From IMG/VR virus record IMGVR_UViG_3300032046_000001, positions 124,001 through 188,000 of that record: 64,000 nt of DNA; one strand, given 5' to 3'. A program made the position numbers and the translations under genes. Below, piece after piece: positions 11,961-53,134 of the stretch (position 1 is the stretch's first letter; each line of letters starts with the position of its first letter). The notes below the pieces were generated by a model that was not told the DNA's origin, ran no database searches, and saw nothing but the letters and a program-made list of their open reading frames with translations.

Positions 11961-11968
11961 AGTATAAT

Positions 11969-12059
11969 AGAGAGATAGAGAACGATCGCTCGAAAAGAAG
12001 TAATCCGAACTTCCTTCTCTCTTTAAATTTATCATTCGGAAAATAACCAAAAATCGGAG
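11969..12059 (+). ncRNA. Structured leader element, copy 2
   Basis: P1 11969-75/12016-22, P2 GAG/CTC, GAAAA, P3 GAAGT/ACTTC; loop TCCGA is complementary to TCGGA at 12036-40 and 12053-57 (over the SD GGAGG). Confidence 0.75.
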
Positions 12060-12067
12060 GTTATAAA

Positions 12068-13322: not shown

Positions 13323-13324
13323 TT

Positions 13325-30548: not shown

Positions 30549-30950
30549 ATGGACGAAATAGATATTGAAAATAAAAAGAATAAACAAAAAATAAAAAATA
30601 ACAAAAGAAGAGATAAGAATAGAAATTATGTGTTAGAATATTTAAGTGGGCATCCATGTGTTGATTGTGGTGAAACAGATCCAGTTGTTTTAGAATTTGA
30701 TCATGTGAGAGACAAAGATAAAAAGATATCAGATTTAATAAATTACTCCCATAACAGATTAAAAGAAGAAATTTTAAAATGTGAAGTACGATGTAGTAAT
30801 TGTCACAAACGAAAAACATCAAAAGAACAAAATTGGTACAAAGAGAGGTATGAAAAGAATAATGAAAAAATTGACAGTGGGAATACTGAACAAGGATCGG
30901 GGAATAGAAATTTGTTTACTATTACAATCTCTATTGAATCAGACTTATGA
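30549..30950 (+). CDS. Zinc-binding HNH endonuclease
   Basis: PCVDCGETDPVVLEFDHV...CEVRCSNCHKRKT. Confidence 0.8.
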   Translation: MDEIDIENKKNKQKIKNNKRRDKNRNYVLEYLSGHPCVDCGETDPVVLEFDHVRDKDKKISDLINYSHNRLKEEILKCEVRCSNCHKRKTSKEQNWYKERYEKNNEKIDSGNTEQGSGNRNLFTITISIESDL

Positions 30951-33072
30951 TGATTTTGATATTATCATATATGATGATAATTCAAATGATTTTTTACAGA
31001 GTAATTCTACATTTTTATCTCTTAAAAAATTACATGAAGGTTTGAACCATAATATTGAAATTATAAAAGGAGTCAATAGAGGTCCACAATTTGGTGGACA
31101 AAAAATATTTGAAAATTCAAAAACTGAATTTATTTTACGTTTAGATGATGACGTTACTCTCCAACCAGAGTGTATTGAAAATTTAATAAATTGTTTTAAT
31201 GATAACGTTGTTGCCGTTGGTCCTATTTATATCCTACCTTTTATTCCTATATCAGATCAAATCATAGATCTTGAAAAAATACCAGATTATGTTGGAACTT
31301 TGTTTGGAATTGATAGTGGTGTATATGTAAACGGTATCTTACAAATGAACGTACATTTAAACGCTGATTTAATTAAAAAATATCAAATTCAACATCTTCA
31401 TTCTGGTTTCATGTATAAGAAATCTGCACTTGAAAAAATAGGTGGTTATTTTCTTGGTTACTCAAAAGTAGGTCATAGAGAAGAAACAGATACGAGTTAT
31501 CGATTATTTTTAGATGGTGGAAAATTAAAAATCGCTCAAAATGCAGTTTGTTTTCACTTCCATCCTTCTACTGGTGGTATTCGAACAGATGGTGGAAAAC
31601 CAAATGATCCAATATTATGGGAACAGGATGAAAAAATTTTTATTGAACGATTTAAGAATAATTTTAAAAATGAAGTTATAATAGTTCCAATTCAGAAAGC
31701 CGATGAAGTAAATAAGAATATGCGTGTTTATCCAGCAAATGTTCTCGAAAAAGCTGTTAAAAATCCAATATCATTTGAAAAAAAATTAGTTAATGATCTT
31801 GCTGATATTGCAGCTAAACAAGTGGATGATGAAATAATGAATTCATATCAACCTAAAATTCATCTTGTGACCGTAACTCATGGTAATCATGAAAAATTAG
31901 AAAAATTAATTGAAAGTTTGTATAAATATACAACTACTGAATTTTCATGGACTATAGTTAATAATGATATTTCAGATGAATCATATTCAAGTTTGCTTGA
32001 ATTATTAGAACATCATCAAATGAATATTGCTCATATTCAAGTTGATAAAGAACTCTCTGTAAGTGAAGCCAGAAATCAAGGTGCTAAACTCAGACCAGAA
32101 GATACTGAATATATCTGTTTTATTGATGATGACGCTCTCGTACTTGGTAAATGGTCTGAAAAAGATTGGTTAAGAATGTTGTATGAACTCTTTATAAGTG
32201 AAACAGATATGGGAGTAGTTAGTCCAATATATACTTGGTTCGAACCGTTCCAGTCCTATGTAGCTTCAGTCGCTTGTTTATTTACATCGACTAAAGTTTG
32301 GGAACAGGTTGGCGGTTTTGATCCGATATTTGGAAATAAAGAGAAAGAATGTTGGGGATATGAGGACAACGACTGGTCTTATCGGGTTCAATCACTGGGT
32401 TATAAATTGAAGAGAATTAATGATGAGGGATTTCCATTTTATCATTGTGATACTACATTCAAACAGAAAGCTGAATGGCAAGAAAAAGGTTTGGTTAAAG
32501 CAAAAGAACTTTTATTATCAAAATATAATATAGAAGACATTAACAAATTTAGGAGAGTAGAATATCCATTTACTGATAATCAAATGAATTGTTTTGGTAA
32601 AAAATTAAATGTGGGTTGTTATCACATGAAACTTGATGGTTTTATTAATATTGATATTAATCCTGAATGTGAACCAGATATATTAAAAGATATTCGAGAA
32701 TTAGAATTTGATAATGAATCTATTGATTTAATATTAGCATCTCAAGTAATAGAGCATTTTGATTTGATAGATGTTAAATTTATATTATCAAAATTTTATA
32801 GATGGTTGAAAAAAGGTGGACAATTTATTGTAGAAGTTCCAGATGTTGGTTGTATACTTGATAAAGTTGAAAAGAATGAATGGAAAATAGAAGATTATTA
32901 TGGTGCGATCTATGGTAATAAAGAAATTATGGGGCAAAGTCATAAAAGTCAATTCGATATTATACTTCTAATAAACATGTTGAAAGAAGCTGGTTTTAAT
33001 AATACTATTAGAAATTTTAATACTTCAGATAATGACGAGATATCGCTTAGATATGATTGTATAAAGGAATAG
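30850..33072 (+). CDS. Multidomain protein: GT2 + GT2 + class I methyltransferase-like domain
   Basis: ILRLDDD...HREETD; ICFIDDD...WGYEDND; KLNVGC..LDGFINID..SQVIEH..LKKGG..VEVPD. Start 30850 or 30862 (track 30781). Confidence 0.8.
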   Translation: MKRIMKKLTVGILNKDRGIEICLLLQSLLNQTYDDFDIIIYDDNSNDFLQSNSTFLSLKKLHEGLNHNIEIIKGVNRGPQFGGQKIFENSKTEFILRLDDDVTLQPECIENLINCFNDNVVAVGPIYILPFIPISDQIIDLEKIPDYVGTLFGIDSGVYVNGILQMNVHLNADLIKKYQIQHLHSGFMYKKSALEKIGGYFLGYSKVGHREETDTSYRLFLDGGKLKIAQNAVCFHFHPSTGGIRTDGGKPNDPILWEQDEKIFIERFKNNFKNEVIIVPIQKADEVNKNMRVYPANVLEKAVKNPISFEKKLVNDLADIAAKQVDDEIMNSYQPKIHLVTVTHGNHEKLEKLIESLYKYTTTEFSWTIVNNDISDESYSSLLELLEHHQMNIAHIQVDKELSVSEARNQGAKLRPEDTEYICFIDDDALVLGKWSEKDWLRMLYELFISETDMGVVSPIYTWFEPFQSYVASVACLFTSTKVWEQVGGFDPIFGNKEKECWGYEDNDWSYRVQSLGYKLKRINDEGFPFYHCDTTFKQKAEWQEKGLVKAKELLLSKYNIEDINKFRRVEYPFTDNQMNCFGKKLNVGCYHMKLDGFINIDINPECEPDILKDIRELEFDNESIDLILASQVIEHFDLIDVKFILSKFYRWLKKGGQFIVEVPDVGCILDKVEKNEWKIEDYYGAIYGNKEIMGQSHKSQFDIILLINMLKEAGFNNTIRNFNTSDNDEISLRYDCIKE

Positions 33073-33075
33073 AAA

Positions 33076-33687
33076 GTGAATGATTTTTATATTTATATTT
33101 ATTTAGATCCAAGAAAACTTGGAAGATATTGTTATGAAAATATCTGTTTTTTATATAGTCCGCTTTATGTTGGAAAAGGAAAAGATAGAAGATGGAAAAA
33201 CATTAATGGAAGAAATCCACATTTTGAAAATAAAATAAATAAAATTAAAAAATTGGGATTAGAACCAATTGTTATAAAATTATTTGAAAATTTAAGTGAG
33301 AAAGAGTCTTTAGATAAAGAAATTGAATTAATAAAAGAAATAGGAAGATTTGATTTAAAAACTGGACCTATTGTTAATGAAACTATTGGCGGTGAAGGAA
33401 AAAGTGGAAATATTGTTTTAGAAGAAACAAGAAAAAAAATGAGTGAAAAAAAGAAAGGAATATCTAGATCGATAGAAACAAGAAATAAAATTAAAGAAAA
33501 TCATGCTAATTTTAAAGGAGAAAATAATTCAACTTCAAAATTAATAGAACAAGACGTTATCGAAATAAAAATGTTACTTATAGAAAAAAATTTCACACAA
33601 ACACAAATCGCTATTATTTTTGGAGTTAATCGAGCAGCAATTTCAAAAATAAAAACAGGTAGAACGTGGAATCATATAAAAATTTGA
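33076..33687 (+). mobile_element. GIY-YIG homing endonuclease with C-terminal HTH
   Basis: FYIYIYLDPRK...PLYVGKGKDRR, NETIGGEG, KLIEQDVIEIKMLL..TQTQIA. Confidence 0.85.
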
Positions 33688-33700
33688 AAAAGGAATAAAA

Positions 33701-33997
33701 ATGAATACAGAATTAATTAGAGAAATAAAAGAAAATGTTTATAAGATACTGGAATTATTTATTGGTACAGAATTAGTAGTAGGTGATTCATTAGATAATT
33801 ATTATATGACTTATAGAAAAGCCATCATGGATGAACTCTATAAATACAAAAATGAATTTAGTGAAACAACAAATGACGACTATATTGATTTTAAATATAA
33901 AATTGATTTTACTGTTGGTAAAAATAGAATTATAGAAGATATAACAGTAGTGTTTCAAGCACCGGAATGTATTGCTGATTATGAGGAGATTGAATAG
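33701..33997 (+). CDS. Hypothetical protein
   Basis: 98 aa, SD AAGGA. Confidence 0.6.
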   Translation: MNTELIREIKENVYKILELFIGTELVVGDSLDNYYMTYRKAIMDELYKYKNEFSETTNDDYIDFKYKIDFTVGKNRIIEDITVVFQAPECIADYEEIE

Positions 33998-34497
33998 TGA
34001 GTTTTGATGAAATCGTTGATAGAGTTGTAAAAACATTTGATATAAGACCACGAACCAGGGTTTTTCTTGGAGGAACTTGTGGTAATTCAACTTGGAGAAA
34101 TGAAATTATTCCAAAGTTACAAGTTGATTATTTTAATCCAGTTGTAGAAGACTGGACGCTTGAATGTCAAAAACAAGAAGAAGAAGAAAAAAAAATATGC
34201 AGTATTCATCTTTATATTATCACTAAAGAAATTACAGGCTATTATTCAATAGCCGAAATAGTTGATGCATCGAATAAATTTACTAACTGTGATTATGAAT
34301 CAAAATATCCATATAAAACAATTATATATTGTTTTCTTCCAGAAGGTATGACAAAACATCAAATTAAATCATTAGAATTAATTGGTGAAATGGTTGGAGG
34401 TAATGGAGCGATTTGGTTAAAAAATTTAGACGAGGTTGTTGATTATATCAATATATTTACCAATGGAGAATTTTATGAAAGGGATGATATATATTGA
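33997..34497 (+). CDS. Nucleoside 2-deoxyribosyltransferase-like protein
   Basis: VFLGGTCGNSTWR..YFNPVVEDW...YSIAEIVD pattern. Confidence 0.65.
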   Translation: MSFDEIVDRVVKTFDIRPRTRVFLGGTCGNSTWRNEIIPKLQVDYFNPVVEDWTLECQKQEEEEKKICSIHLYIITKEITGYYSIAEIVDASNKFTNCDYESKYPYKTIIYCFLPEGMTKHQIKSLELIGEMVGGNGAIWLKNLDEVVDYINIFTNGEFYERDDIY

Positions 34498-35558
34498 AAA
34501 TAATTTTTTTTAGTTCAAGAATGTCATTTGAAGCTGATAGTTTAGAAACAAGAGGACTCGGTGGTTCTGAGAGTGCAATGTTAAATATGGCATTTGCGCT
34601 TAAAATGACTTGTCCTACAGATGAAATTATAGTTTATAATAATAATTCTGGAAAATATAAAGAATATAAAGAAGTCATATTCAAAACAATAACTGATTTT
34701 TATAATGATGTTAAAAATTTCGATGCCGATGTTCTTATTTCAATTCGCCAACCAGAAATATTTTATACGATTCCATATATCGATTCAAAATTAAAAATTT
34801 TGTGGAGTCAAGATATTTGTAATGAAACTGAATTAGAAAATTTACAAAAAAATAAATATGGTATTAAAAATATTGATATCATACTTGCTAATAGTAGATT
34901 CTCACATGATAATATAAAAGAAAATTTTCCAGATTCTCATATTAGAATTTTGAGAAATGGATATAATTCTGAATGGTCGTCAGATACTAAGAAAGAAAAT
35001 ATTGCAGTATATACAAGTACTCCATTTAGGGGTTTGAATTTACTTGCTGATTACTGGGTAGAAATATATCAAAAATGTAGAAAATATTATGATATTAATC
35101 CAAAATTAAAAATATTTGGTGGAATGGATCTTTATAATCAATCCAATCATTATTTTAAAGATCTTTATGATAAATTATCTAATCTACCAAATGTAGAAGT
35201 TTTTGGAAGTGTATGTCAGAGAAGTTTATATTATCATTTAAACTCAGCTAAAGTAATGTTGTATCCATGTACTTATATAGAAACAAGTTGTATGAGCGTG
35301 TTAGAGGCTTTAGCCAATAAATTATGGATTATAACAACAAAGAGTGGTGCATTATCAGAACAAGTGATCGATGATAATAATGGCAACCTAATAGAATATA
35401 GTGAACTTAATAATTCAAATAAATATCGAGAATTATTTATTCAATCTGCAATAGATTCATTTAGAAATAGTGAAAAAATACAAGAAATACCATATACCGT
35501 ATCCTCATGGGATAAACAGTCTAAATTATTGAAATGTTTAATAAGAGAGAAATTATGA
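34494..35558 (+). CDS. Glycosyltransferase family 4 (GT-B)
   Basis: GLGGSESA, YTSTPFRGL, YPCTYIETSCMSVLEA, SGALSE. Confidence 0.85.
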   Translation: MKIIFFSSRMSFEADSLETRGLGGSESAMLNMAFALKMTCPTDEIIVYNNNSGKYKEYKEVIFKTITDFYNDVKNFDADVLISIRQPEIFYTIPYIDSKLKILWSQDICNETELENLQKNKYGIKNIDIILANSRFSHDNIKENFPDSHIRILRNGYNSEWSSDTKKENIAVYTSTPFRGLNLLADYWVEIYQKCRKYYDINPKLKIFGGMDLYNQSNHYFKDLYDKLSNLPNVEVFGSVCQRSLYYHLNSAKVMLYPCTYIETSCMSVLEALANKLWIITTKSGALSEQVIDDNNGNLIEYSELNNSNKYRELFIQSAIDSFRNSEKIQEIPYTVSSWDKQSKLLKCLIREKL

Positions 35559-35851
35559 AAGTATATAAAACAGTTCCAGTACCTGCGAGAACAAGAGAAG
35601 TAATAATGTCAAAAGTCTGTGATATTTGTAAAAAAATATATAGTGTTAATGATAAAGATTCATGGACTGATGAGAATTATGATATTTTAAATACTGAAAT
35701 TTATATGGAAGAAGGCAGAGATTATTATCATGAAGGTGGTAATAAAGAAATTACAGAAGTTGATATCTGTCCTGATTGTTTTAAAAATCATTTAATTCCG
35801 TGGTTAGAATCTATAGGAGCTATCATTAAAAAGACGGAAGTGGATTGGTAA
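35555..35851 (+). CDS. Hypothetical zinc-binding protein
   Basis: CDICK...DICPDCF; ATGA-coupled. Confidence 0.6.
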   Translation: MKVYKTVPVPARTREVIMSKVCDICKKIYSVNDKDSWTDENYDILNTEIYMEEGRDYYHEGGNKEITEVDICPDCFKNHLIPWLESIGAIIKKTEVDW

Positions 35852-36633
35852 TGAAGACACCATATATACTTGTTTCAATTCCATTTTATAATAAATCAGA
35901 TCTCACAATATCTTGTTTAGATAGTTTATTCAAATCATATATAAGCGGTTTTAATTGGCAAGTTATTCTTTGGGATGATGGTTCTTCTAAAGAAGAATTA
36001 AATAGATTAAAAAATTCTATAGATAGTCATGTTGGAATTATTTGTAATGAAAAAAATATCGGTTATACTCAAACTTGTATTAATGCAGTTAATTATGCCA
36101 AACATGAAAATTTTGATTATTTATTTTTATTAAATAATGATACTATATTATTTCCAGATGCCTTCACCAATCTTGTAAAACGAATATTAACAAACAATAA
36201 TATTGCAGCGGTTAGTGGTAAAGTTATCCACTGGAATGAAAATATAATTATTCATACAGGAACTCGAATTAAAAATAATAAAATATCAGATCCTTATTGT
36301 GGAATGGAAATAAATAACCCAATCACAAATCATGTTGAAAGAAGATTATGGATAAATGGTTGTTATTGTTTATATAATCTTGATATTTTAAGAAAAGAAA
36401 ATTTAAATTTTAATCCTGATTTTGGTCCGGCTTATTTTGAAGAGTCTGATTTAATGACTGAATTGAATATGAGGGGATATTCTGTTATATATGAACCAAA
36501 AGCAAGAGTGAGACATCTTGTTAATGGAACAACCAGAGATTATAATTTTGGAAAAATATTTGATGATAACTGGAATAAATATTTAAATAAATGGGAAAAG
36601 TACTTTAGTTCTAAAAATTTATATTTCCAATAA
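35851..36633 (+). CDS. Glycosyltransferase family 2
   Basis: WDDGS, NIGY, LLNNDT, YFEESDL. Confidence 0.85.
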   Translation: MKTPYILVSIPFYNKSDLTISCLDSLFKSYISGFNWQVILWDDGSSKEELNRLKNSIDSHVGIICNEKNIGYTQTCINAVNYAKHENFDYLFLLNNDTILFPDAFTNLVKRILTNNNIAAVSGKVIHWNENIIIHTGTRIKNNKISDPYCGMEINNPITNHVERRLWINGCYCLYNLDILRKENLNFNPDFGPAYFEESDLMTELNMRGYSVIYEPKARVRHLVNGTTRDYNFGKIFDDNWNKYLNKWEKYFSSKNLYFQ

Positions 36634-36642
36634 ATTGACAAA

Positions 36643-36684
36643 AAAAATATAACGGAGAGATAAAAGCTTCTCCGTTATATTTTT
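36643..36684. terminator. 16-bp hairpin between convergent genes
   Basis: AAAAATATAACGGAGA...TCTCCGTTATATTTTT, with A/T tails on both sides. Confidence 0.8.
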
Positions 36685-36689
36685 CATAT

Positions 36690-37061
36690 TTATTGAATTA
36701 ATGACTGAAGATTATTAATCTCTGCGGAACACAAATTGATCAACACATCCATAAATTCAGCCAATGTTTGTTGTGATATATTTTTACCACCTTGCTGAAC
36801 CAAAACAATTCCGGTAATCATTGGTGATCTTGATTTCATCACGATATCAATGATATCTATATGAAAAGTTTCACCACCCATGTCTCGATATCTATAGAAT
36901 TCGATTTCAGTTTGTGGAAGAATTACTACATTATTTTTAACAATATTAGAAATCAAGGCAAGAAAAACCAGTGGTGATAATGTTTCAATATTAAAATAGA
37001 ATGTGGATGTGCGATAATTGATAGTACAAAAATTTTTCATGTGGTTCCTCCAATCAGGCAA
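36690..37061 (-). CDS. Hypothetical protein
   Basis: 123-aa ORF. Confidence 0.6.
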   Translation of the reverse strand: MPDWRNHMKNFCTINYRTSTFYFNIETLSPLVFLALISNIVKNNVVILPQTEIEFYRYRDMGGETFHIDIIDIVMKSRSPMITGIVLVQQGGKNISQQTLAEFMDVLINLCSAEINNLQSLIQ

Positions 37062-37422
37062 TAGTGTTCAACATATCGTAAAGATCACGGGTCGCATCCT
37101 GAATCAGATCATCCATATAAGCATGAAGAGGTGATGTTGAGGTTTTTTCACCATTTTCAATCTTACAAACTATACCAGAGTACTTCAGACTTCCAGGTTT
37201 TGGTTCTCCAATGTAACCAACACCCATTATATCAATACATTCGATGATCCCACCACTTGCTTGGTGTGCTTGATGTTGACGAAAACAATTACACCTATTA
37301 TCAGTGATTTTAATCTCATCGTCAATGATACCAATGATGAGATTAAGAAGATCCAGTTGTGAATAAGCAATCACAGCACAAACAACAGTTTTGAAACTGA
37401 TCAACGCATAGATTTTTTTCAT
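37054..37422 (-). CDS. Hypothetical protein
   Basis: 122 aa, SD AAGGAG. Confidence 0.65.
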   Translation of the reverse strand: MKKIYALISFKTVVCAVIAYSQLDLLNLIIGIIDDEIKITDNRCNCFRQHQAHQASGGIIECIDIMGVGYIGEPKPGSLKYSGIVCKIENGEKTSTSPLHAYMDDLIQDATRDLYDMLNTIA

Positions 37423-37480
37423 GATGCGGATCTCCTTATAAAAATGTGAAAGATTGAAAAAATATATTTAAATAATCACC

Positions 37481-37494
37481 TATTAATATATATA
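37481..37494 (-). promoter_or_regulatory. TATATATATTAATA motif (minus strand)
   Basis: Exact copy upstream of the 37422 start. Confidence 0.5.
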
Positions 37495-37510
37495 ACTCGA
37501 AAGGAAAATA

Positions 37511-38593
37511 ATGAATAATTTAATCGAAAAAATGATCGAGAATGATAAAAAGAGAATTCAATATACAGAAGATTTATCAAAAAAATTAGATGACGTAAAA
37601 GACAATTTAACAACCATAGATGAAGTAATGGGAAAACCTAAACCATCAGATGATCATGTTGTTATTATTCAAGATGGTGGTATTGGTGATTGTATTTGTG
37701 CAACACCAATGTTAGAATCAGCAAGAAAAATATTTAAAGACAAAAAAATAATTTTTTCAAGTTTTTATCCAGAAATTTTTTTCAATAATCCAAATATTGA
37801 TAAATTATATAGTGCTCGTTCACCAGAAGATATATATGAAACTTGGGTAAAACCTCTGAGGGATTTCAGAAGTATTATTAAATGTGACATGTATAATTTA
37901 CCAATCTACAGATTATTTCCCGGTAAATTAAGTCAGGCATTTTGTTATGCATATAAACTTCCATATCCGGGTGATAATATCAAGGTTTATATAACTAAAG
38001 AAGAAGATCAAGAAGCTCAAAAATTTCTTTCATCATTTCCAAGACCAGTTATATTAATACAACCTTATGGCGGTAGAATGAATTTTAATGAGAGAGATAT
38101 TTTGACTGATAATAAGAATTGGTTTAAAGAGGAATGGGAAGAATTAGTAAAAGGACTCAATGAAACATTTGATACAGTTCAAGTTGGAGGAATTAAGGAA
38201 GAACCAATTAAAGGTATAACAACGTATTTAATAGGTATTACTAATATTAGACAAACTATGGCATTAGTTAAAAACTCATTAACTTTTGTTACAGTTGATA
38301 GTTTCTTAAATCATGTTGGACCTGCGGTTGATAAGTCTGGTGTTGTTTTATTTGGTAGGAGTAATCCATACATTTATGGTCACGATTTAAATAAAAATAT
38401 CTGGATTGAAGATTCATGTGATAATATTGGATGTGGACGACCTGAATCATATTATGGTGATATAAGAATGTTTAAAGGGATAATTGGAAATTGGGAATGT
38501 CCGAATAAGAAATGTATGAAAGCCATAACTCCTGAGATGGTAGTTAGGAAAGTATATGAAGCTGTTGAAATAAATACAAGAGAAAAAAAATAA
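37511..38593 (+). CDS. Glycosyltransferase family 9 (heptosyltransferase-like)
   Basis: GGIGDCIC..P, LIQPYGG, K.W..E.W..L, VTVDSFLNH, VVLFG. Confidence 0.8.
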   Translation: MNNLIEKMIENDKKRIQYTEDLSKKLDDVKDNLTTIDEVMGKPKPSDDHVVIIQDGGIGDCICATPMLESARKIFKDKKIIFSSFYPEIFFNNPNIDKLYSARSPEDIYETWVKPLRDFRSIIKCDMYNLPIYRLFPGKLSQAFCYAYKLPYPGDNIKVYITKEEDQEAQKFLSSFPRPVILIQPYGGRMNFNERDILTDNKNWFKEEWEELVKGLNETFDTVQVGGIKEEPIKGITTYLIGITNIRQTMALVKNSLTFVTVDSFLNHVGPAVDKSGVVLFGRSNPYIYGHDLNKNIWIEDSCDNIGCGRPESYYGDIRMFKGIIGNWECPNKKCMKAITPEMVVRKVYEAVEINTREKK

Positions 38594-38681: not shown

Positions 38682-38846
38682 CTACTGGACGTTGGTTTCG
38701 ATGATCCGCAAATCTCTACTTTTCAGGTGCCGCAGGGAAGCCACAGCATCATCATACTCTTCAGCGGATTTACGAATTACTTGTATGTTCCCATATCCGT
38801 CCTCATACTTGATATACCAATTTACACAATTTTCAGATGTTGACAT
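38682..38846 (-). CDS. 54-aa hypothetical protein (not in ORF track)
   Basis: SD AAGGAG, ATG 38846, MSTSENCVNWYIKYEDGYG...ETNVQ, TAG at 38684-82. Confidence 0.6.
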   Translation of the reverse strand: MSTSENCVNWYIKYEDGYGNIQVIRKSAEEYDDAVASLRHLKSRDLRIIETNVQ

Positions 38847-38927: not shown

Positions 38928-39659
38928 CTATTTATGTCCAACAACCTTATCATAATCTACCCGTTTTTGATAGATACAATCAAGTTCCTTGATCAGTATC
39001 TCTTTGATTATTTTCAAATCACCTAATCTTAAATAAACATCATCAAATTGGCCATCATTTAATAAATGGTCAATAGTTGAGTTTATAATAATAACTGGAT
39101 CTAAATTCTCAGGTTGAGACTGTGATATCGATCTCGATTTTGCTTCAGTGATATCACACATCATTAAAATCGCAGCCTCAAGACTTTGAGGTTTCATCAT
39201 CTTATATCTAAAAGTAGAACTATCAGTTGTTTGTGATTTATCAAAAAAATATTTAACAATTGTCGATCCATGATGTTGTGAGACAATATCGATAATATCA
39301 CGAGAAAAATTTCTATTGTTTAAGAGTATTAAAGCACCATCTGATACATGCCTTGTTATTATTTGATAACTAATAGTTGGTTCTAATGTATCATGAATAT
39401 TTTCACCTTCCGCTTGATTCTCACTGAAGTATTTTGGATTAAATAATTTTCCAATATCGTGATATAAAGCGCAAACTTTCATGAATATTGCGTGTAGTCC
39501 TAAACTAGATCCAACACTTTCAACCATTGTCATTACAGCTTGGGAATGTTTAAATGATCCAGGACAAGCCTCTTTAAACATAGTTAATAAACGATTTTGT
39601 GGATCTAATAATGAACTCAAATCAGATTCAGATTGTTGAATTTTCAAATATTTAAACAT
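38928..39659 (-). CDS. HD-domain phosphohydrolase resembling the cytoplasmic domain of PgpH/YqfF
   Basis: PGSFKHS, ALYHDIGKLFNPKYFSENQ, QIITRHV, VSQHHGSTIVKYFF, FRY...P.S.EAAILMMCD; no TM region. Confidence 0.8.
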   Translation of the reverse strand: MFKYLKIQQSESDLSSLLDPQNRLLTMFKEACPGSFKHSQAVMTMVESVGSSLGLHAIFMKVCALYHDIGKLFNPKYFSENQAEGENIHDTLEPTISYQIITRHVSDGALILLNNRNFSRDIIDIVSQHHGSTIVKYFFDKSQTTDSSTFRYKMMKPQSLEAAILMMCDITEAKSRSISQSQPENLDPVIIINSTIDHLLNDGQFDDVYLRLGDLKIIKEILIKELDCIYQKRVDYDKVVGHK

Positions 39660-39668
39660 ATAACCTTT

Positions 39669-41918
39669 CTAATGACTAAAGGTATCAAGTTCAGGAACTT
39701 TACCTTCAGCTAAAAGTTTATCTTCCATCTTGCCCTTGAATACTAAATATTCATCACTAATATATTTGAGTATTTTTCTACCCAATTTAGGATGAAATTG
39801 TTCGGTTGTGGATTTGATAATAACTCCCTCTCTTATGTGATCACCAATGGTTGATTTACCAGATGATAGTTCGATAACTTTTTCTATACTAAATGGACCT
39901 TCATATAATATAGGAACTATAGGAAGTTTTTTTCTTTCACAAAAGTTTTTAAACCAATACCAGTTTAAATATTGGTTATCAATGATCACATCAAAGAATC
40001 TTACAGTTTGAGTAAATGGTGAATCATAAGGAAAAAATTTCTGAATTCCATATCCATAAATCTCACCAAATACTTCTTCACCCAAATTCAATTTGTTTTT
40101 CAATTCATACTTCTCTGCCATTCTCCAATATACATTCAAAAACTTATCTTTCTGTGTTCTCTTCAAGTTAGTACGATGTGTACCAACAACAAAGAATCCT
40201 GGGTTTTTAACACCTAAATATTTAGTTAGTAATAATCTCATTTTTAACATCAATGGAATATATTTCCAATTGATATTAAAAGGATCTACATTACCAGTCC
40301 TAAGATTAGAATTATGTACTAATACTCCATTTGCAAAATAATTATGTGTTTCTGTTTCAATATCATAACGAGTTTTTAAATATTTATATCTGTCAGTTGG
40401 TATGTAATCATCAATTGAAATTATAGTTTGTTCAGTTAAAAGTGGAATATTTTTAAATTTTATTTTGGTAATAATAGGATTAATATTTAATCTATAATTT
40501 TCTGGTAATTTGTATTGCATACACTTTGGAATATATGGTGAAATCAAAACAAATAATTTATTTGCATCTTCATGATTAAGTCTTATTCTCCAATATTCAT
40601 CACTTTTATATTTAGTAGAATTTATATCTAAATATTTTAACGCACTAATTAAATTATCAATAGATTCTTCATTAAATCCGCATGTTGCAAATAATGCTCT
40701 ATCTTTCTGGTCTTCGTTATGAGATAATGAACCATCATCCATATACCAAAATGCTAATGATATTGGTGATAATTTTCCTATTATAGATTTTGGAACTTCT
40801 TTTTTGGAATCAATAAACCAATATGAAAATAATTTTTTTATTGATTTATCTGATACAGTTCTTGCTCGACACATTTCAGTTCCGTAACCACTAATTATAT
40901 TTTTTTGTTTATTTCCAGAAATGTCATTTAGTAATTCTAATGTATAATCAATATATTCTTCATGTTCTTTTTTATGTCCAAATTGAATAGAATTATCAGA
41001 TAAACAACCATCTCCTAACATTTTTCCTATAAGTACTTGTTCTTGAATATATGAAAGTTCTTTTTGATAATTATTAATTAAAATTTTATCATCTTTTTTT
41101 AAATCAGAACATTTAATATATTTATTTAAATCTGGATTAAATATTTCATGATTTTCAGTTATTATTAATATACCATAATGATTACCAGATATCCCATTTC
41201 TAGTAAATTTTATTTTTTTCCATTTTTCTGAAATTCCATTATTAAACCAATTTAATATTTTGGATGAAACTATATTATTATTTTCATCTACACCTTTAAC
41301 TTCTAAATTTAATTTATCATTTACTATTTTTCCAATTTTTTCTTTTTTGTCATTAAATAGATCTATTTCACATTCATAATTCAAACAACCATGAATTTTT
41401 TCAAGAATAACTACTTCTTCATCTTCTTCAAATATATCAGGAAAATTCTTGAAATTTTCAATGTTGGTATATTGTGGAAAACCAGTAAATTCAGGATATT
41501 GAGTAAATCCTTTTGATTTTAAAGCACAACCACCATCACCTGTTTCTGGTGGTTCATACTTTTCGATCTTCAGTATTTCTCTAACATCATCTCCAAGTTT
41601 CCATTCTGGTTCTTTATCAATAATCAAACCTTGAGATAATATACCTCTAAGTTTAACTGTTTTAACACGACCAGCTATGATATTACCCTGTGTATCTTTT
41701 ATTTTATTGGTAAGATATCCAGTTATTCCCAACTTTTCAGATAACTCGAATGGAATGAGGCTGTCTATAGGAATATAGACAGCCTCATCTCCAACCTTAT
41801 ATTTACCTTTAGAAGAAATACAACTCCATCCTTTAACCTGAATAATTTCTAATCTATCCGCATTATCATGAGGTGTAATATTTTTAATTTTTACAACCTC
41901 ACATATTAATGAACTCAT
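39669..41918 (-). CDS. RNA ligase (DRB0094/Rnl5-like) interrupted by an intein
   Basis: HDNADRLE, EKIHG|SN (motif I split), FGEIYG, FFDV, VPILYEG, REGVII, LK; ATG 41918 follows AGGAGGTG. Confidence 0.85.
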   Translation of the reverse strand: MSSLICEVVKIKNITPHDNADRLEIIQVKGWSCISSKGKYKVGDEAVYIPIDSLIPFELSEKLGITGYLTNKIKDTQGNIIAGRVKTVKLRGILSQGLIIDKEPEWKLGDDVREILKIEKYEPPETGDGGCALKSKGFTQYPEFTGFPQYTNIENFKNFPDIFEEDEEVVILEKIHGCLNYECEIDLFNDKKEKIGKIVNDKLNLEVKGVDENNNIVSSKILNWFNNGISEKWKKIKFTRNGISGNHYGILIITENHEIFNPDLNKYIKCSDLKKDDKILINNYQKELSYIQEQVLIGKMLGDGCLSDNSIQFGHKKEHEEYIDYTLELLNDISGNKQKNIISGYGTEMCRARTVSDKSIKKLFSYWFIDSKKEVPKSIIGKLSPISLAFWYMDDGSLSHNEDQKDRALFATCGFNEESIDNLISALKYLDINSTKYKSDEYWRIRLNHEDANKLFVLISPYIPKCMQYKLPENYRLNINPIITKIKFKNIPLLTEQTIISIDDYIPTDRYKYLKTRYDIETETHNYFANGVLVHNSNLRTGNVDPFNINWKYIPLMLKMRLLLTKYLGVKNPGFFVVGTHRTNLKRTQKDKFLNVYWRMAEKYELKNKLNLGEEVFGEIYGYGIQKFFPYDSPFTQTVRFFDVIIDNQYLNWYWFKNFCERKKLPIVPILYEGPFSIEKVIELSSGKSTIGDHIREGVIIKSTTEQFHPKLGRKILKYISDEYLVFKGKMEDKLLAEGKVPELDTFSH
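40311..41387 (-). mobile_element. 359-aa intein with LAGLIDADG endonuclease
   Basis: Starts CLNYECEI, ends YDIETETHNYFANGVLVHN, +1 Ser; LIGKMLGDG and FWYMDDG blocks. Confidence 0.93.
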
Positions 41919-41933
41919 TTTTAAGTCCACCTC

Positions 41934-43559
41934 CTAATCAGAATTTTCATGCCATTGTAGATCATCCAAAATTGCGTCAGCCACATTTTTTAGATGATCT
42001 CCTATTTTTTCAAAATTGTTAACTATATCAATAAATATAATACCAGCAAGTACATCACACTGACCTTGCTTTAATCTATTAATATGGTCACTTTTAAGTT
42101 TAGTTCTAAGTTCATTAATCATTTGTTCCTTAATTACGATACACTGAGCATCCTCAACTTTATTAGATTGAAGTGAAAAAATACTACTTTCAATCATGTC
42201 TAAAAGTTCCTTATACATTGTCATTAACCCTTGTGTTGCATCGTCTGATAATGACAATTTATTTTCTATTTTCTGTTTAATGAGATTTCTAAGATTCATT
42301 GCATGATCACCAATTCTTTCGACATCATTAACAATATGAATCAGTGCAGGAATTTTTGTGGACTCTTCATGTGATAAATTTTCTTCCATCAACCGAACTA
42401 AATAACTTGTTATAGAATACCGTCTAGTATCTACAATTTCCTCTTTTTGTTCAATGTTTTCAAGAAATTTAAGATCATTTTTTGAAAATGCGTTTATGAC
42501 AGACTGTATCATAATTTTTGACAACTCTAATGTTTTAACAATCTCTTTTGTCGCTGCTTCTATTGCTATAGATGGAGTATGCAATAAATGATTTTCAAGA
42601 TATTTAGTATCCGCATAATCATCACTATCAGTGTGTTTTTCTTTTACTAATTTGATTATGAATTTACTATATAGTTTTGTAAATGGTAAAATAAGTAATG
42701 TACATGTGACATTGAATATCGTATGTGCGTTCGCACACTGTCGAGCAAGATCAATAGATGTTAATTGAATCAAGTGAGTAAATGGATGTATAAATGGTAG
42801 AAAAATAAGTGTGCCAAAAACGTTAAAGAAAAGGTGTGCAACTGCCGTTCTCTTGGCATTTGTTGACGTTCCAATACATGCCAATAATGCCGTTGCACAT
42901 GTGCCAATATTACATCCTAAAATTAGAGGTACTGCACCACTTAGGGTTATGAGATTAAGAGATGCTAAAGTTAATACTATGCCTGTTGTGACACTACTAC
43001 TTTGAATAATGGCTGTTACAATAGCACCTGCAATGACAGCTAAAATAGGGTTTGTATTAAATCTTATAAAAATATTTTTAAATATTATACTATCAGCTAA
43101 TGGTTTTACACCAATAGTCATAATATTTAATCCCAGAAATAGAACACCAAAACCAAGCAATGACAGTCCGAAATATTTCCAGGATTTATTTTTACAAATA
43201 AGATATAAACATAAACCAATTGCCAGCACGGGTAGCGCATATTCCGTCAGTTTGAATGCTATAATCTGTGCTGTCATCGTTGTGCCTATATTGGCACCAA
43301 ATATTATACCCAACGTTTGATAGAAACTGAGAAGTCCGGCATTTACAAAACCTACAGCAAGAACCGTAGTTGCCGAGCTTGATTGAATGATAGATGTAAT
43401 TATTGCGCCAACAATAGTTCCTTTTAATGGACTGCTTGTTAATTTTCCTAAGATAGTTCTTATCTTGTTAGAAGCCACTTTTTCGAGTCCATCACCCATT
43501 AAATGGATACCATAAATAAATAATGCCAGACCGCCAATTAAATTAAATATAACATTCAT
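41934..43559 (-). CDS. Na+/phosphate cotransporter family protein with PhoU-like domain
   Basis: Two QSSS repeats, GANIGTT and GCNIGT, C-terminal ERIGDH and EKIGDH. Confidence 0.9.
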   Translation of the reverse strand: MNVIFNLIGGLALFIYGIHLMGDGLEKVASNKIRTILGKLTSSPLKGTIVGAIITSIIQSSSATTVLAVGFVNAGLLSFYQTLGIIFGANIGTTMTAQIIAFKLTEYALPVLAIGLCLYLICKNKSWKYFGLSLLGFGVLFLGLNIMTIGVKPLADSIIFKNIFIRFNTNPILAVIAGAIVTAIIQSSSVTTGIVLTLASLNLITLSGAVPLILGCNIGTCATALLACIGTSTNAKRTAVAHLFFNVFGTLIFLPFIHPFTHLIQLTSIDLARQCANAHTIFNVTCTLLILPFTKLYSKFIIKLVKEKHTDSDDYADTKYLENHLLHTPSIAIEAATKEIVKTLELSKIMIQSVINAFSKNDLKFLENIEQKEEIVDTRRYSITSYLVRLMEENLSHEESTKIPALIHIVNDVERIGDHAMNLRNLIKQKIENKLSLSDDATQGLMTMYKELLDMIESSIFSLQSNKVEDAQCIVIKEQMINELRTKLKSDHINRLKQGQCDVLAGIIFIDIVNNFEKIGDHLKNVADAILDDLQWHENSD

Positions 43560-50556: not shown

Positions 50557-52002
50557 TTAAACTAAATGGTGACATTCTTTTTTAGACATAATAATTTTCA
50601 GTTCTTCATACGATACTGGTTTGAAATTATTATTATCAACTCCAACATCGTAGGACTTTCCTAATGACGGAAGTTCTCCATGTGAATTGCCCACTATTAT
50701 ATGTTTTCCATTTCTTCTAATAACTATAGTTTTATTTTTAACCTTAACACACCAAAAATGTTCATTATTTACAGTCTCAATAAAAACTTTATTTTTTAAA
50801 TTATCGTGTGTTCTACACGATCGTTTAGTTACTACCAATTCATAATTAATTTTTTTTGCAAAACCACCGCGTCGTTCAGAAATATTACACATGTATTCAT
50901 TTCTTATACATGCTGTTTGTATTAAATCTGCTTCTATTTTTTTAGATGTGTATATTAAAATTGAAGTTTTATTTTTATAACCATCTGTATGAGTATATTC
51001 TTCTAATATTATATCTAATTGATTTTGATTTGAATCAATAATTATATCACTAATAGGTTTTAATCTAATATTATAAAAATAATCTGGTTTATGAAAATTA
51101 AAACAAATTGAATCATCTTTCTGTTTATTTCTGCTATAATTAATATTCAATTTTTTTAATAAATTTTCTATTCTGTTAATTTTTCTTGTTTTAAAAACTC
51201 TAATTCTTATTAAATCAGTATTACATAAATTACCATCTGCCGCTATCCAAACTAATAACTTAATTTGGTCATTGTTTAAATTAATTCCAGTTTGATTGCC
51301 AATTGCAGATTTTTTAAATTTTCTTTTATTGATTTTAAAAATTTCATCCGTATAAAATTTTCTAAATTCCTCTTTTTTTCTTCCTATTAAAATATCAATC
51401 AATATATGATTTGGTGTTAATCTTAAATCTAACCCCTTTGATTTTATATTATACACATCACCTGTATGATTATAATCTATAATTTCGTCTATTTCATTAT
51501 ATTCTAATTTTTTATTTTCAATATTTAAAGTTAATATTTTATGACCATATAATAATTCACTTCTTTTTTTCCAACCGTTATCTGTTAAAATTTCTGTTTC
51601 ATCATCTAAACAATGGGCATATAGTTCCCATGCTCCATGATGAGAACAATTCCAAACTCTCATCGCATAATGACACAGAGTTATTTTTTGTTGTCCAATC
51701 CTAATATCATGAAGATTGTGAACTTCTTTACAATATTCTTTAATTGTATTTATAAATCGAAAATCATGATTCCCAAGGATGAATATTTTTTGACCATTCA
51801 TTTTACTAAGTGCAGTTATTGCACCTTCCTTGGTCATCGCAATATCACCTAAATAATAAACAGTGTCTTTTGTCCTAACGATTGAATTATGGTTATCCAA
51901 AAGACACTGTTGTTGTTCGTACTCATTTTTAAAAGGCCGATTGCAGTACCTCAATATATTATAATGAAGATTGTGCCAATCAGCAGTAAAGAAAATATTC
52001 AT
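50557..52002 (-). CDS. Calcineurin-like metallophosphoesterase interrupted by an intein
   Basis: DWH, LGD, GNHD, HY, AH|SH motifs; spliced product about 172 aa. Confidence 0.88.
   Translation of the reverse strand: MNIFFTADWHNLHYNILRYCNRPFKNEYEQQQCLLDNHNSIVRTKDTVYYLGDIAMTKEGAITALSKMNGQKIFILGNHDFRFINTIKEYCKEVHNLHDIRIGQQKITLCHYAMRVWNCSHHGAWELYAHCLDDETEILTDNGWKKRSELLYGHKILTLNIENKKLEYNEIDEIIDYNHTGDVYNIKSKGLDLRLTPNHILIDILIGRKKEEFRKFYTDEIFKINKRKFKKSAIGNQTGINLNNDQIKLLVWIAADGNLCNTDLIRIRVFKTRKINRIENLLKKLNINYSRNKQKDDSICFNFHKPDYFYNIRLKPISDIIIDSNQNQLDIILEEYTHTDGYKNKTSILIYTSKKIEADLIQTACIRNEYMCNISERRGGFAKKINYELVVTKRSCRTHDNLKNKVFIETVNNEHFWCVKVKNKTIVIRRNGKHIIVGNSHGELPSLGKSYDVGVDNNNFKPVSYEELKIIMSKKECHHLV
50686..51612 (-). 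mobile_element. 309-aa intein with LAGLIDADG-like domain, ending Gly-Asn
   Basis: Starts CLDDETEILTDNGWK; LTPNH block B; WIAADG and THTDG; ends FWCVKV..RRNGKHIIVGN, +1 Ser. Confidence 0.9.
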
Positions 52003-52951: not shown

Positions 52952-53134
52952 GAAAATAGAAAAGGAGAAAATTCAAGTCATCACAAATTGACAGAACGAG
53001 ATGTTATTCAAATAAAATTATTATTAAAAGAAGGAAAGTTAACTCAAAAAGAAATAGCCGATATGTTTGGGGTTTCAGTATATACGATTTCAGATATAAA
53101 AAGAGAAATAACTTGGTATCATATAAAAATTTAA
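52952..53134 (+). pseudogene. Orphan C-terminal HTH of a homing endonuclease (not in ORF track)
   Basis: KGENSSHHKLTERDVIQIKLLLKEGKLTQKEIADMFGV...TWYHIKI*; in-frame stop at 52934-36, no nuclease domain upstream. Confidence 0.75.

What the first reader, a model, noticed from the sequence alone, without database searches (positions are those of the whole stretch)
38928..39659. Soluble PgpH-like HD domain: candidate cyclic-nucleotide signal eraser
Seen: the motif series matches the intracellular HD domain of the 7TM-HD family, but the membrane and extracellular parts are absent. Established: Listeria PgpH hydrolyses c-di-AMP through this domain. Inference: a phage enzyme that degrades c-di-AMP or an immune second messenger (CBASS, type III CRISPR).
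Basis: partly seen in the sequence, partly recalled or inferred. Interest (0 to 1): 0.62.

Follow-up and report, generated by a model that had tools for sequence, protein, structure and literature searches.

The report
Stand-alone PgpH-type HD phosphodiesterase in jumbo phage
A 312-kb uncultured phage encodes just the catalytic domain of the bacterial c-di-AMP-degrading enzyme PgpH, without its membrane sensor; it belongs to a large family seen only in metagenomic giant phages and probably destroys cyclic adenine-nucleotide signals in the infected cell, though no substrate has been tested.

Summary
Window 38928-39659 (-) is an intact 243-aa soluble ORF whose only solved relative is the HD domain of Listeria PgpH. 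The sequence match has E 1.7e-41 and a profile of the family gives 1.2e-52. The AlphaFold2 model superposes with TM 0.92 and rmsd 2.1 Å. All seven metal ligands and the catalytic Lys are kept. The 7TM and extracellular parts are absent from the whole 312-kb phage genome.

The protein belongs to a large family of 234-273 aa: over 900 metagenomic proteins and 44 IMG/VR contigs, mostly fragments of phages estimated at about 200-360 kb. The nearest ESM Atlas clusters are 94-100% viral. I found no true member in 50,697 GenBank phage records or in BFVD.

Most likely it is an unregulated cyclic-(di/oligo)adenylate phosphodiesterase, with c-di-AMP to pApA as the default reaction. Whether it targets housekeeping c-di-AMP or immune signals is open.

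A real rival emerged. In three subclades, including this one, the gene lies within two genes of an RNA ligase; in one of them it sits inside a CCA-enzyme–RlaP–ligase–HD–Pth2 cluster. RNA end-healing therefore cannot be dismissed.

A DatZ/PurZ role is unlikely, because 0 of 44 related records carry PurZ.

Verdict: a new viral variant of a known enzyme, of moderate interest.

The parts
38928..39659 (-). Stand-alone PgpH-type HD phosphodiesterase gene (243 aa plus stop)
   Evidence: ORF listed. Pfam HD and TIGR HDIG match. PDB PgpH HD domain, E 1.7e-41. AF2 model pLDDT 86.7. Foldseek 4S1C TMt 0.92, rmsd 2.1 Å.
39546..39548 (-). His38, equivalent to PgpH His514 (metal ligand)
   Evidence: Alignment; ligand list in PMC8177086; invariant in 44 family members.
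39447..39461 (-). H67-D68-I-G-K71 motif, equivalent to PgpH H543, D544 and K547 (two metal ligands plus the leaving-group-stabilising Lys)
   Evidence: Residue roles from PMC8177086 and PMC12072042.
39414..39428 (-). F78-S-E80-N81-Q82, a PgpH-family-specific loop motif (YFxENQ)
   Evidence: F78, E80 and N81 are at least 90% conserved in 45 phage homologues and identical in 4 of 4 cellular full-length PgpH. Q82 is invariant in the 44-member family alignment.
39348..39350 (-). His104, equivalent to PgpH His580 (metal ligand)
39267..39275 (-). H129-H130-G131, equivalent to PgpH H604-H605 (metal ligands). No E...GYP continuation, so not HD-GYP.
   Evidence: Pfam HD_5 scores 17.6 bits against a cut-off of 27.2.
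39153..39155 (-). Asp169, equivalent to PgpH Asp648 (metal ligand; hydrogen-bonds the nucleophilic water)
39664..39669 (-). GAAAGG ribosome-binding-like site 4 nt upstream of the ATG, overlapping the ligase stop codon
   Evidence: Read directly.
39669..41930 (-). Context: DraRnl-type ATP-dependent RNA ligase immediately upstream (9-nt gap), interrupted by a 359-aa LAGLIDADG intein; probably co-transcribed
   Evidence: Pfam PHA02142 OB, RNA_ligase, LAGLIDADG_2 and Intein_splicing; TIGR02306 8e-53. Intein-less 390-aa orthologue in L004.
41934..43559 (-). Context: Na/Pi cotransporter-PhoU fusion gene, first gene of the same leftward string (3-nt gap to the ligase)
   Evidence: Pfam Na_Pi_cotrans 4e-66 and PhoU 4e-25. 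Same order in the 87%-identical relative L004.
38682..38846 (-). Context: 54-aa ORF downstream with a strong AAGGAG site; function unknown; a small ORF is also called in this position in relatives L004 (54 aa) and L065 (101 aa); homology not checked
   Evidence: No PADLOC hit.

Best explanation
The gene encodes a cytosolic, sensor-less copy of the PgpH catalytic domain. This is a binuclear-metal (Mn/Fe) HD phosphodiesterase that opens 3'-5' linked cyclic adenine nucleotides, by default c-di-AMP to 5'-pApA and possibly larger or mixed rings.

Because the extracellular 7TMR-HDED and 7TM parts that regulate the bacterial enzyme are missing, the phage enzyme should act constitutively once made and collapse the target messenger pool of the infected cell.

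Shown: the fold, the complete active site, specific kinship to PgpH, phage origin, and membership of a large family specific to giant phages. Inferred: the substrate, and which pool matters. That pool could be housekeeping c-di-AMP (control of K+/osmolyte uptake and the cell wall) or immune cyclic oligoadenylates / cyclic dinucleotides.
For: Sequence: the only PDB relative is the PgpH HD domain, at E 1.7e-41 for the single sequence and 1.2e-52 for the family profile, aligned end to end.

Structure: AF2 pLDDT 86.7 and pTM 0.85. Foldseek gives 4S1C/4S1B at E 3e-14, TMt 0.87-0.93, rmsd 2.1-3.2 Å and 37-38% identity. The next fold family (HD-GYP Bd1817) is at E 2e-3 and TM 0.45.

Active site: all seven ligands and K547 are kept and invariant in the family.

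Conservation: of 45 positions at least 90% conserved in 45 phage homologues, 26 are identical in all four full-length cellular PgpH compared and 39 in at least one. None is a uniform phage-versus-cell switch. The six phage-only positions lie outside the catalytic motifs in sequence.

Distribution: 916 similar-length homologues. 44 IMG/VR loci, all 202-273 aa stand-alone ORFs (43 of them 234-273 aa; the outlier L053 is a weak partial match), on contigs up to 315 kb. Nearest Atlas clusters are 94-100% Viruses. The phage sequences form one clade against the cellular ones (SH-aLRT 99).

Biological rationale: PgpH is specific for c-di-AMP (PMC8177086). c-di-AMP accumulation suppresses phage production in Listeria (bioRxiv 10.64898/2026.05.13.725036). 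2',3'-c-di-AMP and other cyclic adenylates are immune signals (PMC11974786). Jumbo-phage HD-superfamily PDEs were already predicted to be counter-nucleotide enzymes (PMC7824862).

Neighbours in relatives include a SAM lyase, an HD_4 alarmone hydrolase and an Acb2/Tad1-like gene.
Against: No biochemical data exist for any member. The host is unknown, so it is not known whether it makes c-di-AMP. The only lead is weak: nearest Na/Pi-transporter clusters are Bacillota, while GT9 here and GH108 lysins in relatives would fit a diderm host.

Identity to PgpH is only 34-38%, so specificity could have shifted.

In this phage and two other subclades the gene lies within two genes of an RNA ligase (directly adjacent here and in L017), which suggests RNA-end chemistry instead.

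No expression data: no RNA run holds the region.
Confidence: 0.55

Rival explanations
1. RNA end-healing enzyme. The HD domain removes 2',3'-cyclic phosphate or 3'-phosphate from cleaved tRNA/RNA so that the adjacent ATP-dependent RNA ligase can reseal it, as part of a phage RNA-repair module against host anticodon nucleases or messenger-activated RNases.
For: Here the HD gene starts 9 nt after a DraRnl-type RNA ligase, and the order is kept in the 87%-identical relative L004.

In L017 the order is CCA-adding enzyme, RlaP, RNA-ligase-like, HD, one ORF, Pth2. L012 has CCA and RlaP 4-6 genes upstream. L025 has HD, NT5C, then RNA-ligase-like.

Pfam RNA_ligase matches lie 3.6-19 kb from the HD gene in 14 of the 16 related records that have a match above the family cut-off (coordinates).

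HD, DHH and EAL phosphodiesterases are known to hydrolyse 2',3'-cyclic nucleotides non-specifically, and phage phosphoesterases are expected partners of ATP-dependent ligases (PMC7824862).
Against: The protein is specifically PgpH-like, not like the HD domain of CCA enzymes or any RNA-repair phosphoesterase.

Direct ligase adjacency is limited to 3 of about 8 subclades. Other subclades have Rad52/ClpB/Holliday-resolvase, NAD-DNA-ligase/HNH or SAM-lyase/alarmone-hydrolase neighbours. RlaP is 18-61 kb away in 8 of 10 records that have it.

This genome shows no polynucleotide-kinase match. The only AAA_33 hit is the clamp loader, so healing of 5'-OH ends would be incomplete. The genome has RtcB, which needs no healing. 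It also has a separate RlaP plus 174-aa HD pair at 11-13 kb of the genome.
Confidence: 0.2
2. Hydrolase for another nucleotide messenger or by-product, such as (p)ppGpp or (p)ppApp, linear pApA or nanoRNA, Ap4A, or 2',3'-cNMP, rather than cyclic di- or oligo-adenylates.
For: HD-superfamily enzymes cover all these chemistries (PMC8177086). From my own knowledge, ppGpp binds PgpH as an inhibitor. In six related loci an HD_4 alarmone hydrolase lies 2-3 genes away, showing that these phages do target alarmones.
Against: There is no similarity to RelA/SpoT HD_4, YqeK or other HD subfamilies beyond the generic fold. A separate alarmone hydrolase in relatives argues for a different, complementary substrate. 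This genome has no HD_4 gene.
Confidence: 0.1
3. DatZ-like dATP/dNTP triphosphohydrolase serving the PurZ (2-aminoadenine genome) pathway encoded 15 kb away.
For: The window carries a PurZ-type gene at 54899-55936 (-), with Ser in place of the PurA catalytic Asp. DatZ is also an HD protein.
Against: 0 of 44 HD-bearing phage records have any PurA/PurZ gene. These include records estimated 98% and 100% complete and three at 79-89%. phmmer finds no match to any PDB chain other than PgpH at E up to 0.01, and dNTPase folds score TM 0.33-0.41. The gene is not in the PurZ cluster.
Confidence: 0.03
4. Catalytically silent nucleotide-binding protein (a sponge or regulator), or a gene of no current function.
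For: Phage sponges for cyclic nucleotides exist, such as Acb2 and Tad1 (PMC11974786).
Against: All catalytic residues are invariant across a family diverged to about 38% identity, which indicates selection on catalysis.
Confidence: 0.03

Closest known systems
Listeria monocytogenes PgpH (Lmo1466) cytoplasmic HD domain, PDB 4S1B/4S1C: a c-di-AMP-specific phosphodiesterase
   Same: Same fold (TMt 0.92, rmsd 2.1 Å), 34-38% identity over the whole domain, the same seven metal ligands and Lys547, and the same family motifs YFxENQ, NPHD-like and QHHG.
   Different: It lacks the N-terminal extracellular 7TMR-HDED domain and the seven transmembrane helices. It is viral rather than cellular, forms a separate clade and is not in a phoH-pgpH-ybeY context. 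Substrate untested.
HD-GYP phosphodiesterases (Bd1817, PmGH, PA4781), and the 'HD-GYP enzymes' of jumbo phages predicted by Iyer et al. 2021 (PMC7824862) to counter cyclic-nucleotide immunity
   Same: HD superfamily, multinuclear metal centre, cyclic-dinucleotide substrates. The same functional idea was already proposed for jumbo phages.
   Different: Second-best structural match only (E 2e-3, TM 0.45). Pfam HD_5 is below cut-off. No GYP motif. I could not check whether the accession cited in that paper belongs to this family.
Phage messenger-degrading enzymes Acb1 (2H fold), Apyc1 (metallo-beta-lactamase fold) and AcrIII-1 (DUF1874 ring nuclease)
   Same: Small soluble phage enzymes that cleave cyclic nucleotide immune signals. 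This is the role proposed here.
   Different: Unrelated folds. Those have experimental proof and this one has none. No HD-type member of this functional class has been demonstrated, as far as my searches show.
DatZ, the HD dATPase of PurZ phages (S-2L, PhiVC8)
   Same: Small soluble phage HD protein. This phage has a PurZ-type gene.
   Different: No detectable sequence relationship, and the family does not co-occur with PurZ (0 of 44).
GdpP/DhhP (DHH-DHHA1) c-di-AMP phosphodiesterases and the Sulfolobus membrane-associated DHH nuclease that degrades cA4
   Same: A precedent that a c-di-AMP-type phosphodiesterase scaffold can serve as a ring nuclease for type III CRISPR messengers (cited in PMC7824862).
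   Different: A different superfamily. Analogy only.
HD domain of bacterial CCA-adding enzymes and other RNA-repair phosphoesterases
   Same: HD phosphoesterase genetically linked to RNA ligase, RlaP and CCA genes in some lineages.
   Different: No specific sequence or fold similarity. tRNA-nucleotidyltransferase complexes score TM 0.32-0.37.

Membership tests
PgpH / 7TMR-HD c-di-AMP phosphodiesterase | HD-domain fold of the PgpH type | tested here: met
   Foldseek 4S1C E 2.8e-14, TMt 0.92, rmsd 2.1 Å. phmmer 1.7e-41, profile 1.2e-52.
PgpH / 7TMR-HD c-di-AMP phosphodiesterase | Seven metal ligands (H514, H543, D544, H580, H604, H605, D648) and Lys547 | tested here: met
   H38, H67, D68, H104, H129, H130, D169 and K71 align without ambiguity and are invariant in the family.
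PgpH / 7TMR-HD c-di-AMP phosphodiesterase | N-terminal extracellular 7TMR-HDED domain plus seven transmembrane helices | tested here: not met
   243 aa with no TM-like segment. PF07698 is absent from the whole genome while positive controls ring. Cellular comparators have 7-8 TM segments.
PgpH / 7TMR-HD c-di-AMP phosphodiesterase | Hydrolysis of c-di-AMP to 5'-pApA, with no activity on c-di-GMP | not testable with these tools
   Requires an enzyme assay.
PgpH / 7TMR-HD c-di-AMP phosphodiesterase | Typical cellular gene context phoH-pgpH-ybeY (recalled from general knowledge, not a formal criterion) | tested here: not met
   No YbeY in the genome. PhoH lies about 54 kb away.
HD-GYP c-di-GMP/cGAMP phosphodiesterase | HD_5 / HD-GYP profile above threshold and a GYP loop after the HHE motif | tested here: not met
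   PF13487 scores 17.6 bits against a cut-off of 27.2. The sequence after H129-H130 is G-S-T with no GYP. Structural TM 0.45.
DatZ (PurZ-pathway dATPase) | Sequence kinship to DatZ and co-occurrence with PurZ | tested here: not met
   No PDB hit other than PgpH. 0 of 44 family-bearing records have PurA/PurZ.
RelA/SpoT-type small alarmone hydrolase (HD_4) | PF13328 match | tested here: not met
   No hit in the protein or anywhere in the genome.
Cas3 HD nuclease | Cas3_HD profile above threshold, with a helicase partner | tested here: not met
   PF18019 scores 23.0 against 23.1 and TIGR01596 19.9 against 43.45. PADLOC Cas3 scores 25.7 bits, which is generic HD similarity only.
Phage RNA-repair end-healing phosphoesterase (functional class) | Conserved operonic linkage to an RNA ligase across lineages, with a 5'-kinase partner | tested here: inconclusive
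   Ligase within two genes in 3 subclades (directly adjacent in this one and in L017); 3.6-19 kb away in most others. RlaP is mostly distant. No kinase found in this genome.

The most novel reading that the evidence does not exclude
The family is a new, HD/PgpH-type class of viral ring nuclease or cyclic-dinucleotide eraser. It would work together with the neighbouring RNA ligase (and, in relatives, RlaP, the CCA enzyme and Pth2) as an 'erase the signal, then repair the RNA' module against messenger-activated RNases such as type III CRISPR Csm6/Csx1 or CBASS effectors. It would be the first HD-fold anti-signalling enzyme, and it is widespread in uncultured giant phages.
Probability: 0.2. Interest if true: 0.8.

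Novelty: new variant of a known kind. Interest (0 to 1): 0.55.

Why it matters
If the enzyme hydrolyses c-di-AMP, it would be the first case I could find of a virus encoding a PgpH-type c-di-AMP phosphodiesterase. It would give a direct handle on how phages rewire a messenger that is essential in many bacteria and that, in Listeria, suppresses phage production.

If instead it cleaves immune cyclic oligoadenylates or dinucleotides, it adds a fourth, structurally unrelated fold to the known phage signal-erasing enzymes. It would also be a compact, sensor-free tool for depleting such messengers in cells.

Either way the family is large, confined to uncultured giant phages and absent from isolate collections. 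It is a blind spot of current anti-defence catalogues: no PHROG match and no meaningful PADLOC hit.

Tried and rejected
1. INPHARED tblastn gave 8 'phage' hits. All four that I opened are 490-732-aa proteins with 7-8 TM segments, three of them 686-732 aa, on UNVERIFIED contigs. I take them as bacterial DNA filed as phage, not phage homologues.

2. Megablast of 24 kb of the window against phages found nothing.

3. The genome-contig scan used narrow patterns and returned only three MAG contigs from three unrelated phyla, each with only the phage-like form. These are probably mis-binned phage DNA. The scan says nothing about distant cellular kin.

4. A phylum-level search around one of those MAGs landed in a small-genome phylum, with 2 of 151 hits. 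It was uninformative for origin or host.

6. Host assignment failed. There are no tRNAs in the window. The Atlas taxa for the Na/Pi transporter point weakly to Bacillota.

7. BFVD has no close fold match; the best is E 0.02.

8. The primary PgpH structure paper and a review were not held, so base-contact residues could not be mapped.

9. My first neighbour clustering by BLAST missed divergent RNA ligases. This was corrected with Pfam searches over whole records and phmmer.

10. The AAA_33 hit that might have been a polynucleotide kinase is the clamp loader.

11. Tools not used.

Full report
**What is there.** The window is bases 124,001-188,000 of a 312,420-bp IMG/VR virus record with direct terminal repeats. 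It has about 29% G+C and a T4-like portal gene, so it is a jumbo tailed phage. The region 38928-39659 (-) is an intact 243-codon ORF with an ATG start. A GAAAGG ribosome-binding-like site lies 4 nt upstream. The ORF matches Pfam HD (7e-13) and the HDIG model TIGR00277 (1e-14). It matches no PHROG.

**Check of the observation.**
- A phmmer search of all PDB sequences finds one meaningful relative, the cytoplasmic HD domain of Listeria monocytogenes PgpH (Lmo1466, 4S1B/4S1C). The E-value is 1.7e-41 and the alignment runs end to end, residues 20-236 against 3-220 of 222.
- A profile built from 44 family members raises this to 1.2e-52, with nothing else below E 0.6.
- An AlphaFold2 model (pLDDT 86.7, pTM 0.85) superposes on 4S1C with TM 0.92 (normalised to the target) and rmsd 2.1 Å at 38% identity. 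The next family, HD-GYP, follows at E 2e-3 and TM 0.45.
- The seven metal ligands of PgpH (H514, H543, D544, H580, H604, H605, D648; PMC8177086) correspond without ambiguity to H38, H67, D68, H104, H129, H130 and D169.
- Lys547, which stabilises the leaving group (PMC12072042), corresponds to K71. All of these are invariant in the family.
- The protein has no transmembrane-like segment.
- Pfam 7TM-7TMR_HD is not found anywhere in the phage genome, while the same search rings in four control bacteria.

**A large family restricted to giant phages.**
- The word search returned 916 proteins of similar length at E ≤ 1e-5. The 120 listed are 222-283 aa long, and those beyond the phage's own clade (the top six, 73-98% identical) are 53-60% identical to it.
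- A scan of IMG/VR gave 44 loci on contigs of 5-315 kb. CheckV completeness values imply genomes of roughly 200-360 kb, most of them 240-320 kb.
- In every locus the homologue is a stand-alone ORF. Forty-three are 234-273 aa. The 44th, L053, is a weak partial match of 202 aa and was left out of the tree.
- The nearest ESM Atlas clusters are 94-100% 'Viruses'.
- A T4-like portal is detectable in 9 of the 44 records, including both that are at least 90% complete.
- By contrast, 50,697 GenBank phage records contain no true member. The eight tblastn hits lie on unverified contigs. The four I opened encode proteins of 490-732 aa with 7-8 TM segments, which I read as bacterial DNA.
- BFVD holds no close fold match.
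- On a maximum-likelihood tree the 45 phage sequences form one clade (SH-aLRT 99) apart from four cellular PgpH HD domains. The cellular sample is small, so no donor lineage can be named.
- The phage is found in sediment and soil metagenomes. No RNA run holds it.

**What it most likely does.** Kinship is specific to an enzyme reported to hydrolyse c-di-AMP to 5'-pApA and not c-di-GMP (PMC8177086). Of 45 positions at least 90% conserved among the phage proteins, 26 are identical in all four cellular PgpH and 39 in at least one. No conserved position is a uniform phage-versus-cell switch. The six phage-only positions (D19, L53, L55, L199, G213, E225) lie outside the catalytic motifs in sequence. 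I therefore see no sign of a re-tooled active site.

The default inference is a c-di-AMP-type phosphodiesterase. Lacking the sensor and membrane module, it should act constitutively in the cytoplasm. From my own knowledge, the isolated HD domain of the Listeria enzyme is active in vitro.

Two biological targets are plausible, and I cannot separate them.
- **Housekeeping c-di-AMP.** Its depletion derepresses K+ and osmolyte uptake and weakens the cell wall. Its accumulation suppresses phage production in Listeria (bioRxiv 10.64898/2026.05.13.725036).
- **Immune cyclic adenylates.** These include CBASS and type III CRISPR products, and 2',3'-c-di-AMP as used by Panoptes and sensed by Cap5 (PMC11974786).

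Iyer et al. 2021 (PMC7824862) already predicted that HD-superfamily phosphodiesterases of jumbo phages counter nucleotide-based immunity, so the concept is not new. The PgpH-type family and its extent are new as far as I could find.

**Gene context and the main rival.** In this phage the gene is the third of a tightly packed leftward string:
1. Na/Pi cotransporter-PhoU;
2. after a 3-nt gap, a DraRnl-type RNA ligase split by an intein;
3. after a 9-nt gap, the HD gene;
4. a 54-aa ORF.

The order of the first three genes is kept in the 87%-identical relative L004. In the 73%-identical relative L065 the short contig breaks off inside the unidentified upstream gene, but the HD gene and the downstream glycosyltransferases keep their order.

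Elsewhere the neighbourhood changes with the subclade:
- Rad52 / ClpB-like ATPase / Holliday-junction resolvase;
- NAD-dependent DNA ligase / HNH;
- GH108 lysin / SAM lyase / HD_4 alarmone hydrolase / metallophosphoesterase.

One 59%-identical relative has an Acb2/Tad1-hairpin gene, MazG, QueC and a dGTP diphosphohydrolase-like gene within 7 kb.

My first BLAST clustering suggested that the ligase link was private to this clade. Pfam searches over whole records and phmmer corrected that:
- In L017 the order is CCA-adding enzyme, RlaP, RNA-ligase-like, HD, one ORF, Pth2.
- L012 has the CCA enzyme and RlaP a few genes upstream.
- L025 has HD, NT5C, then RNA-ligase-like.
- In 14 of the 16 records with a match above the family cut-off, an RNA ligase lies 3.6-19 kb from the HD gene.

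So RNA end-healing, meaning 2',3'-cyclic phosphodiesterase or 3'-phosphatase activity for an ATP-dependent ligase, is a genuine alternative. Several points count against it:
- The kinship is specifically to PgpH.
- Ligase adjacency is absent in most subclades.
- RlaP lies 18-61 kb away in 8 of the 10 records that have it.
- I found no polynucleotide kinase in this genome. The one candidate is the clamp loader.
- RtcB is present, and it needs no healing.
- A separate RlaP plus 174-aa HD pair lies at 11-13 kb of the genome.

The two ideas can be joined. An enzyme that erases a cyclic oligoadenylate signal, placed beside enzymes that repair the RNA damage caused by the RNases that signal activates, would be a coherent counter-defence module. 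This is the most novel reading the data allow. I give it about 0.2.

**The PurZ alternative.** The window does carry a PurZ-type gene at 54899-55936 (-). It resembles short archaeal PurA and solved PurZ proteins, and it has Ser where PurA has the catalytic Asp in the GxxxG(D/S)EGKGK motif. However, none of the 44 other records that carry the HD family has any PurA/PurZ gene. These include records estimated 98% and 100% complete. The HD protein also shows no kinship to dNTPases. A DatZ-like role is unlikely.

**Membership and novelty.** The protein meets the catalytic-domain criteria of the PgpH family: fold, ligands, Lys and family motifs. It fails the architectural one, since it has no 7TMR-HDED or 7TM part. 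It is not HD-GYP, Cas3-HD, HD_4 or DatZ. I file it as a new viral, stand-alone variant of a known enzyme kind. Function is inferred, not shown.

**Limits.**
- Host unknown.
- No expression data.
- No substrate data for any member.
- The cellular outgroup is small.

Noticed in passing
window 39669-41930 (-): The DraRnl-type RNA ligase is interrupted by a 359-aa intein (residues 182-540: Cys182 ... His-Asn539-540, then Ser541) that carries a LAGLIDADG homing endonuclease. The intein is inserted directly after the EKIHG nucleotidyl-transferase motif. The 87%-related phage L004 has an intein-less 390-aa orthologue.
   Followed up: yes
window 54899-55936 (-): PurZ-type adenylosuccinate-synthetase homologue (345 aa) with GGQYGSEGKGK, i.e. 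Ser where PurA has the catalytic Asp. Best PDB relatives are short archaeal PurA and phage PurZ / PurA-like proteins. This suggests a 2-aminoadenine (Z) genome.
   Followed up: partly
window 53131-54330 (-): RtcB RNA ligase (Pfam 3e-103) two genes from the PurZ-type gene. The phage therefore has both RtcB and an ATP-dependent RNA ligase.
   Followed up: no
window 41934-43559 (-): Phage-borne Na/Pi cotransporter fused to PhoU domains, a phosphate-uptake auxiliary gene conserved in the close relative L004. The nearest Atlas clusters are Bacillota, which is a weak host lead.
   Followed up: partly
window 30781-38593 (+): Cluster of glycosyltransferases (GT2 with a methyltransferase domain, GT1, GT2, GT9 heptosyltransferase-like) plus a nucleoside 2-deoxyribosyltransferase-like gene at 33997-34497. 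Two unknown 122-123-aa ORFs lie on the opposite strand at 36690-37422.
   Followed up: no
window 23942-27285 (+): Two adjacent proteins of 572 and 541 aa with collagen triple-helix repeats, possibly fibre proteins.
   Followed up: no
window 50557-52002 (-): 481-aa calcineurin-like metallophosphoesterase with a weak intein-splicing hit at residues 138-204. This may be a second intein-containing gene.
   Followed up: no
G000:C1 about 11,185-13,340 (outside the window; L006:1279-1803, L067:832-1914): A second, unrelated 174-aa HD protein lies about 1 kb from an RlaP (RNA-repair Pol-beta nucleotidyltransferase) gene. This is a more conventional RNA-repair pairing than the PgpH-like gene.
   Followed up: partly
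L030, L034, L038-L041 (IMG/VR relatives): In one subclade the PgpH-like gene is followed, 2-3 genes on, by an HD_4 RelA/SpoT-type alarmone hydrolase and a metallophosphoesterase, with SAM-lyase genes on either side. This looks like an island for takeover of host signalling and anti-restriction.
   Followed up: partly
GenBank records OR848126, OR846595, MT835511, MT837542 (loci L061-L064): Records filed as phage (UNVERIFIED) carry PgpH genes with 7-8 TM segments, three of them full-length at 686-732 aa and one read as 490 aa. They are most likely bacterial DNA and would mislead a search for phage PgpH.
   Followed up: yes
L054-L056 (MAG contigs labelled Desulfobacteraceae, Saccharibacteria and Muribaculaceae): Three MAGs from unrelated phyla each carry one phage-like soluble HD gene (53-56% identity) and no other match. 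This probably reflects phage contigs binned into MAGs.
   Followed up: partly
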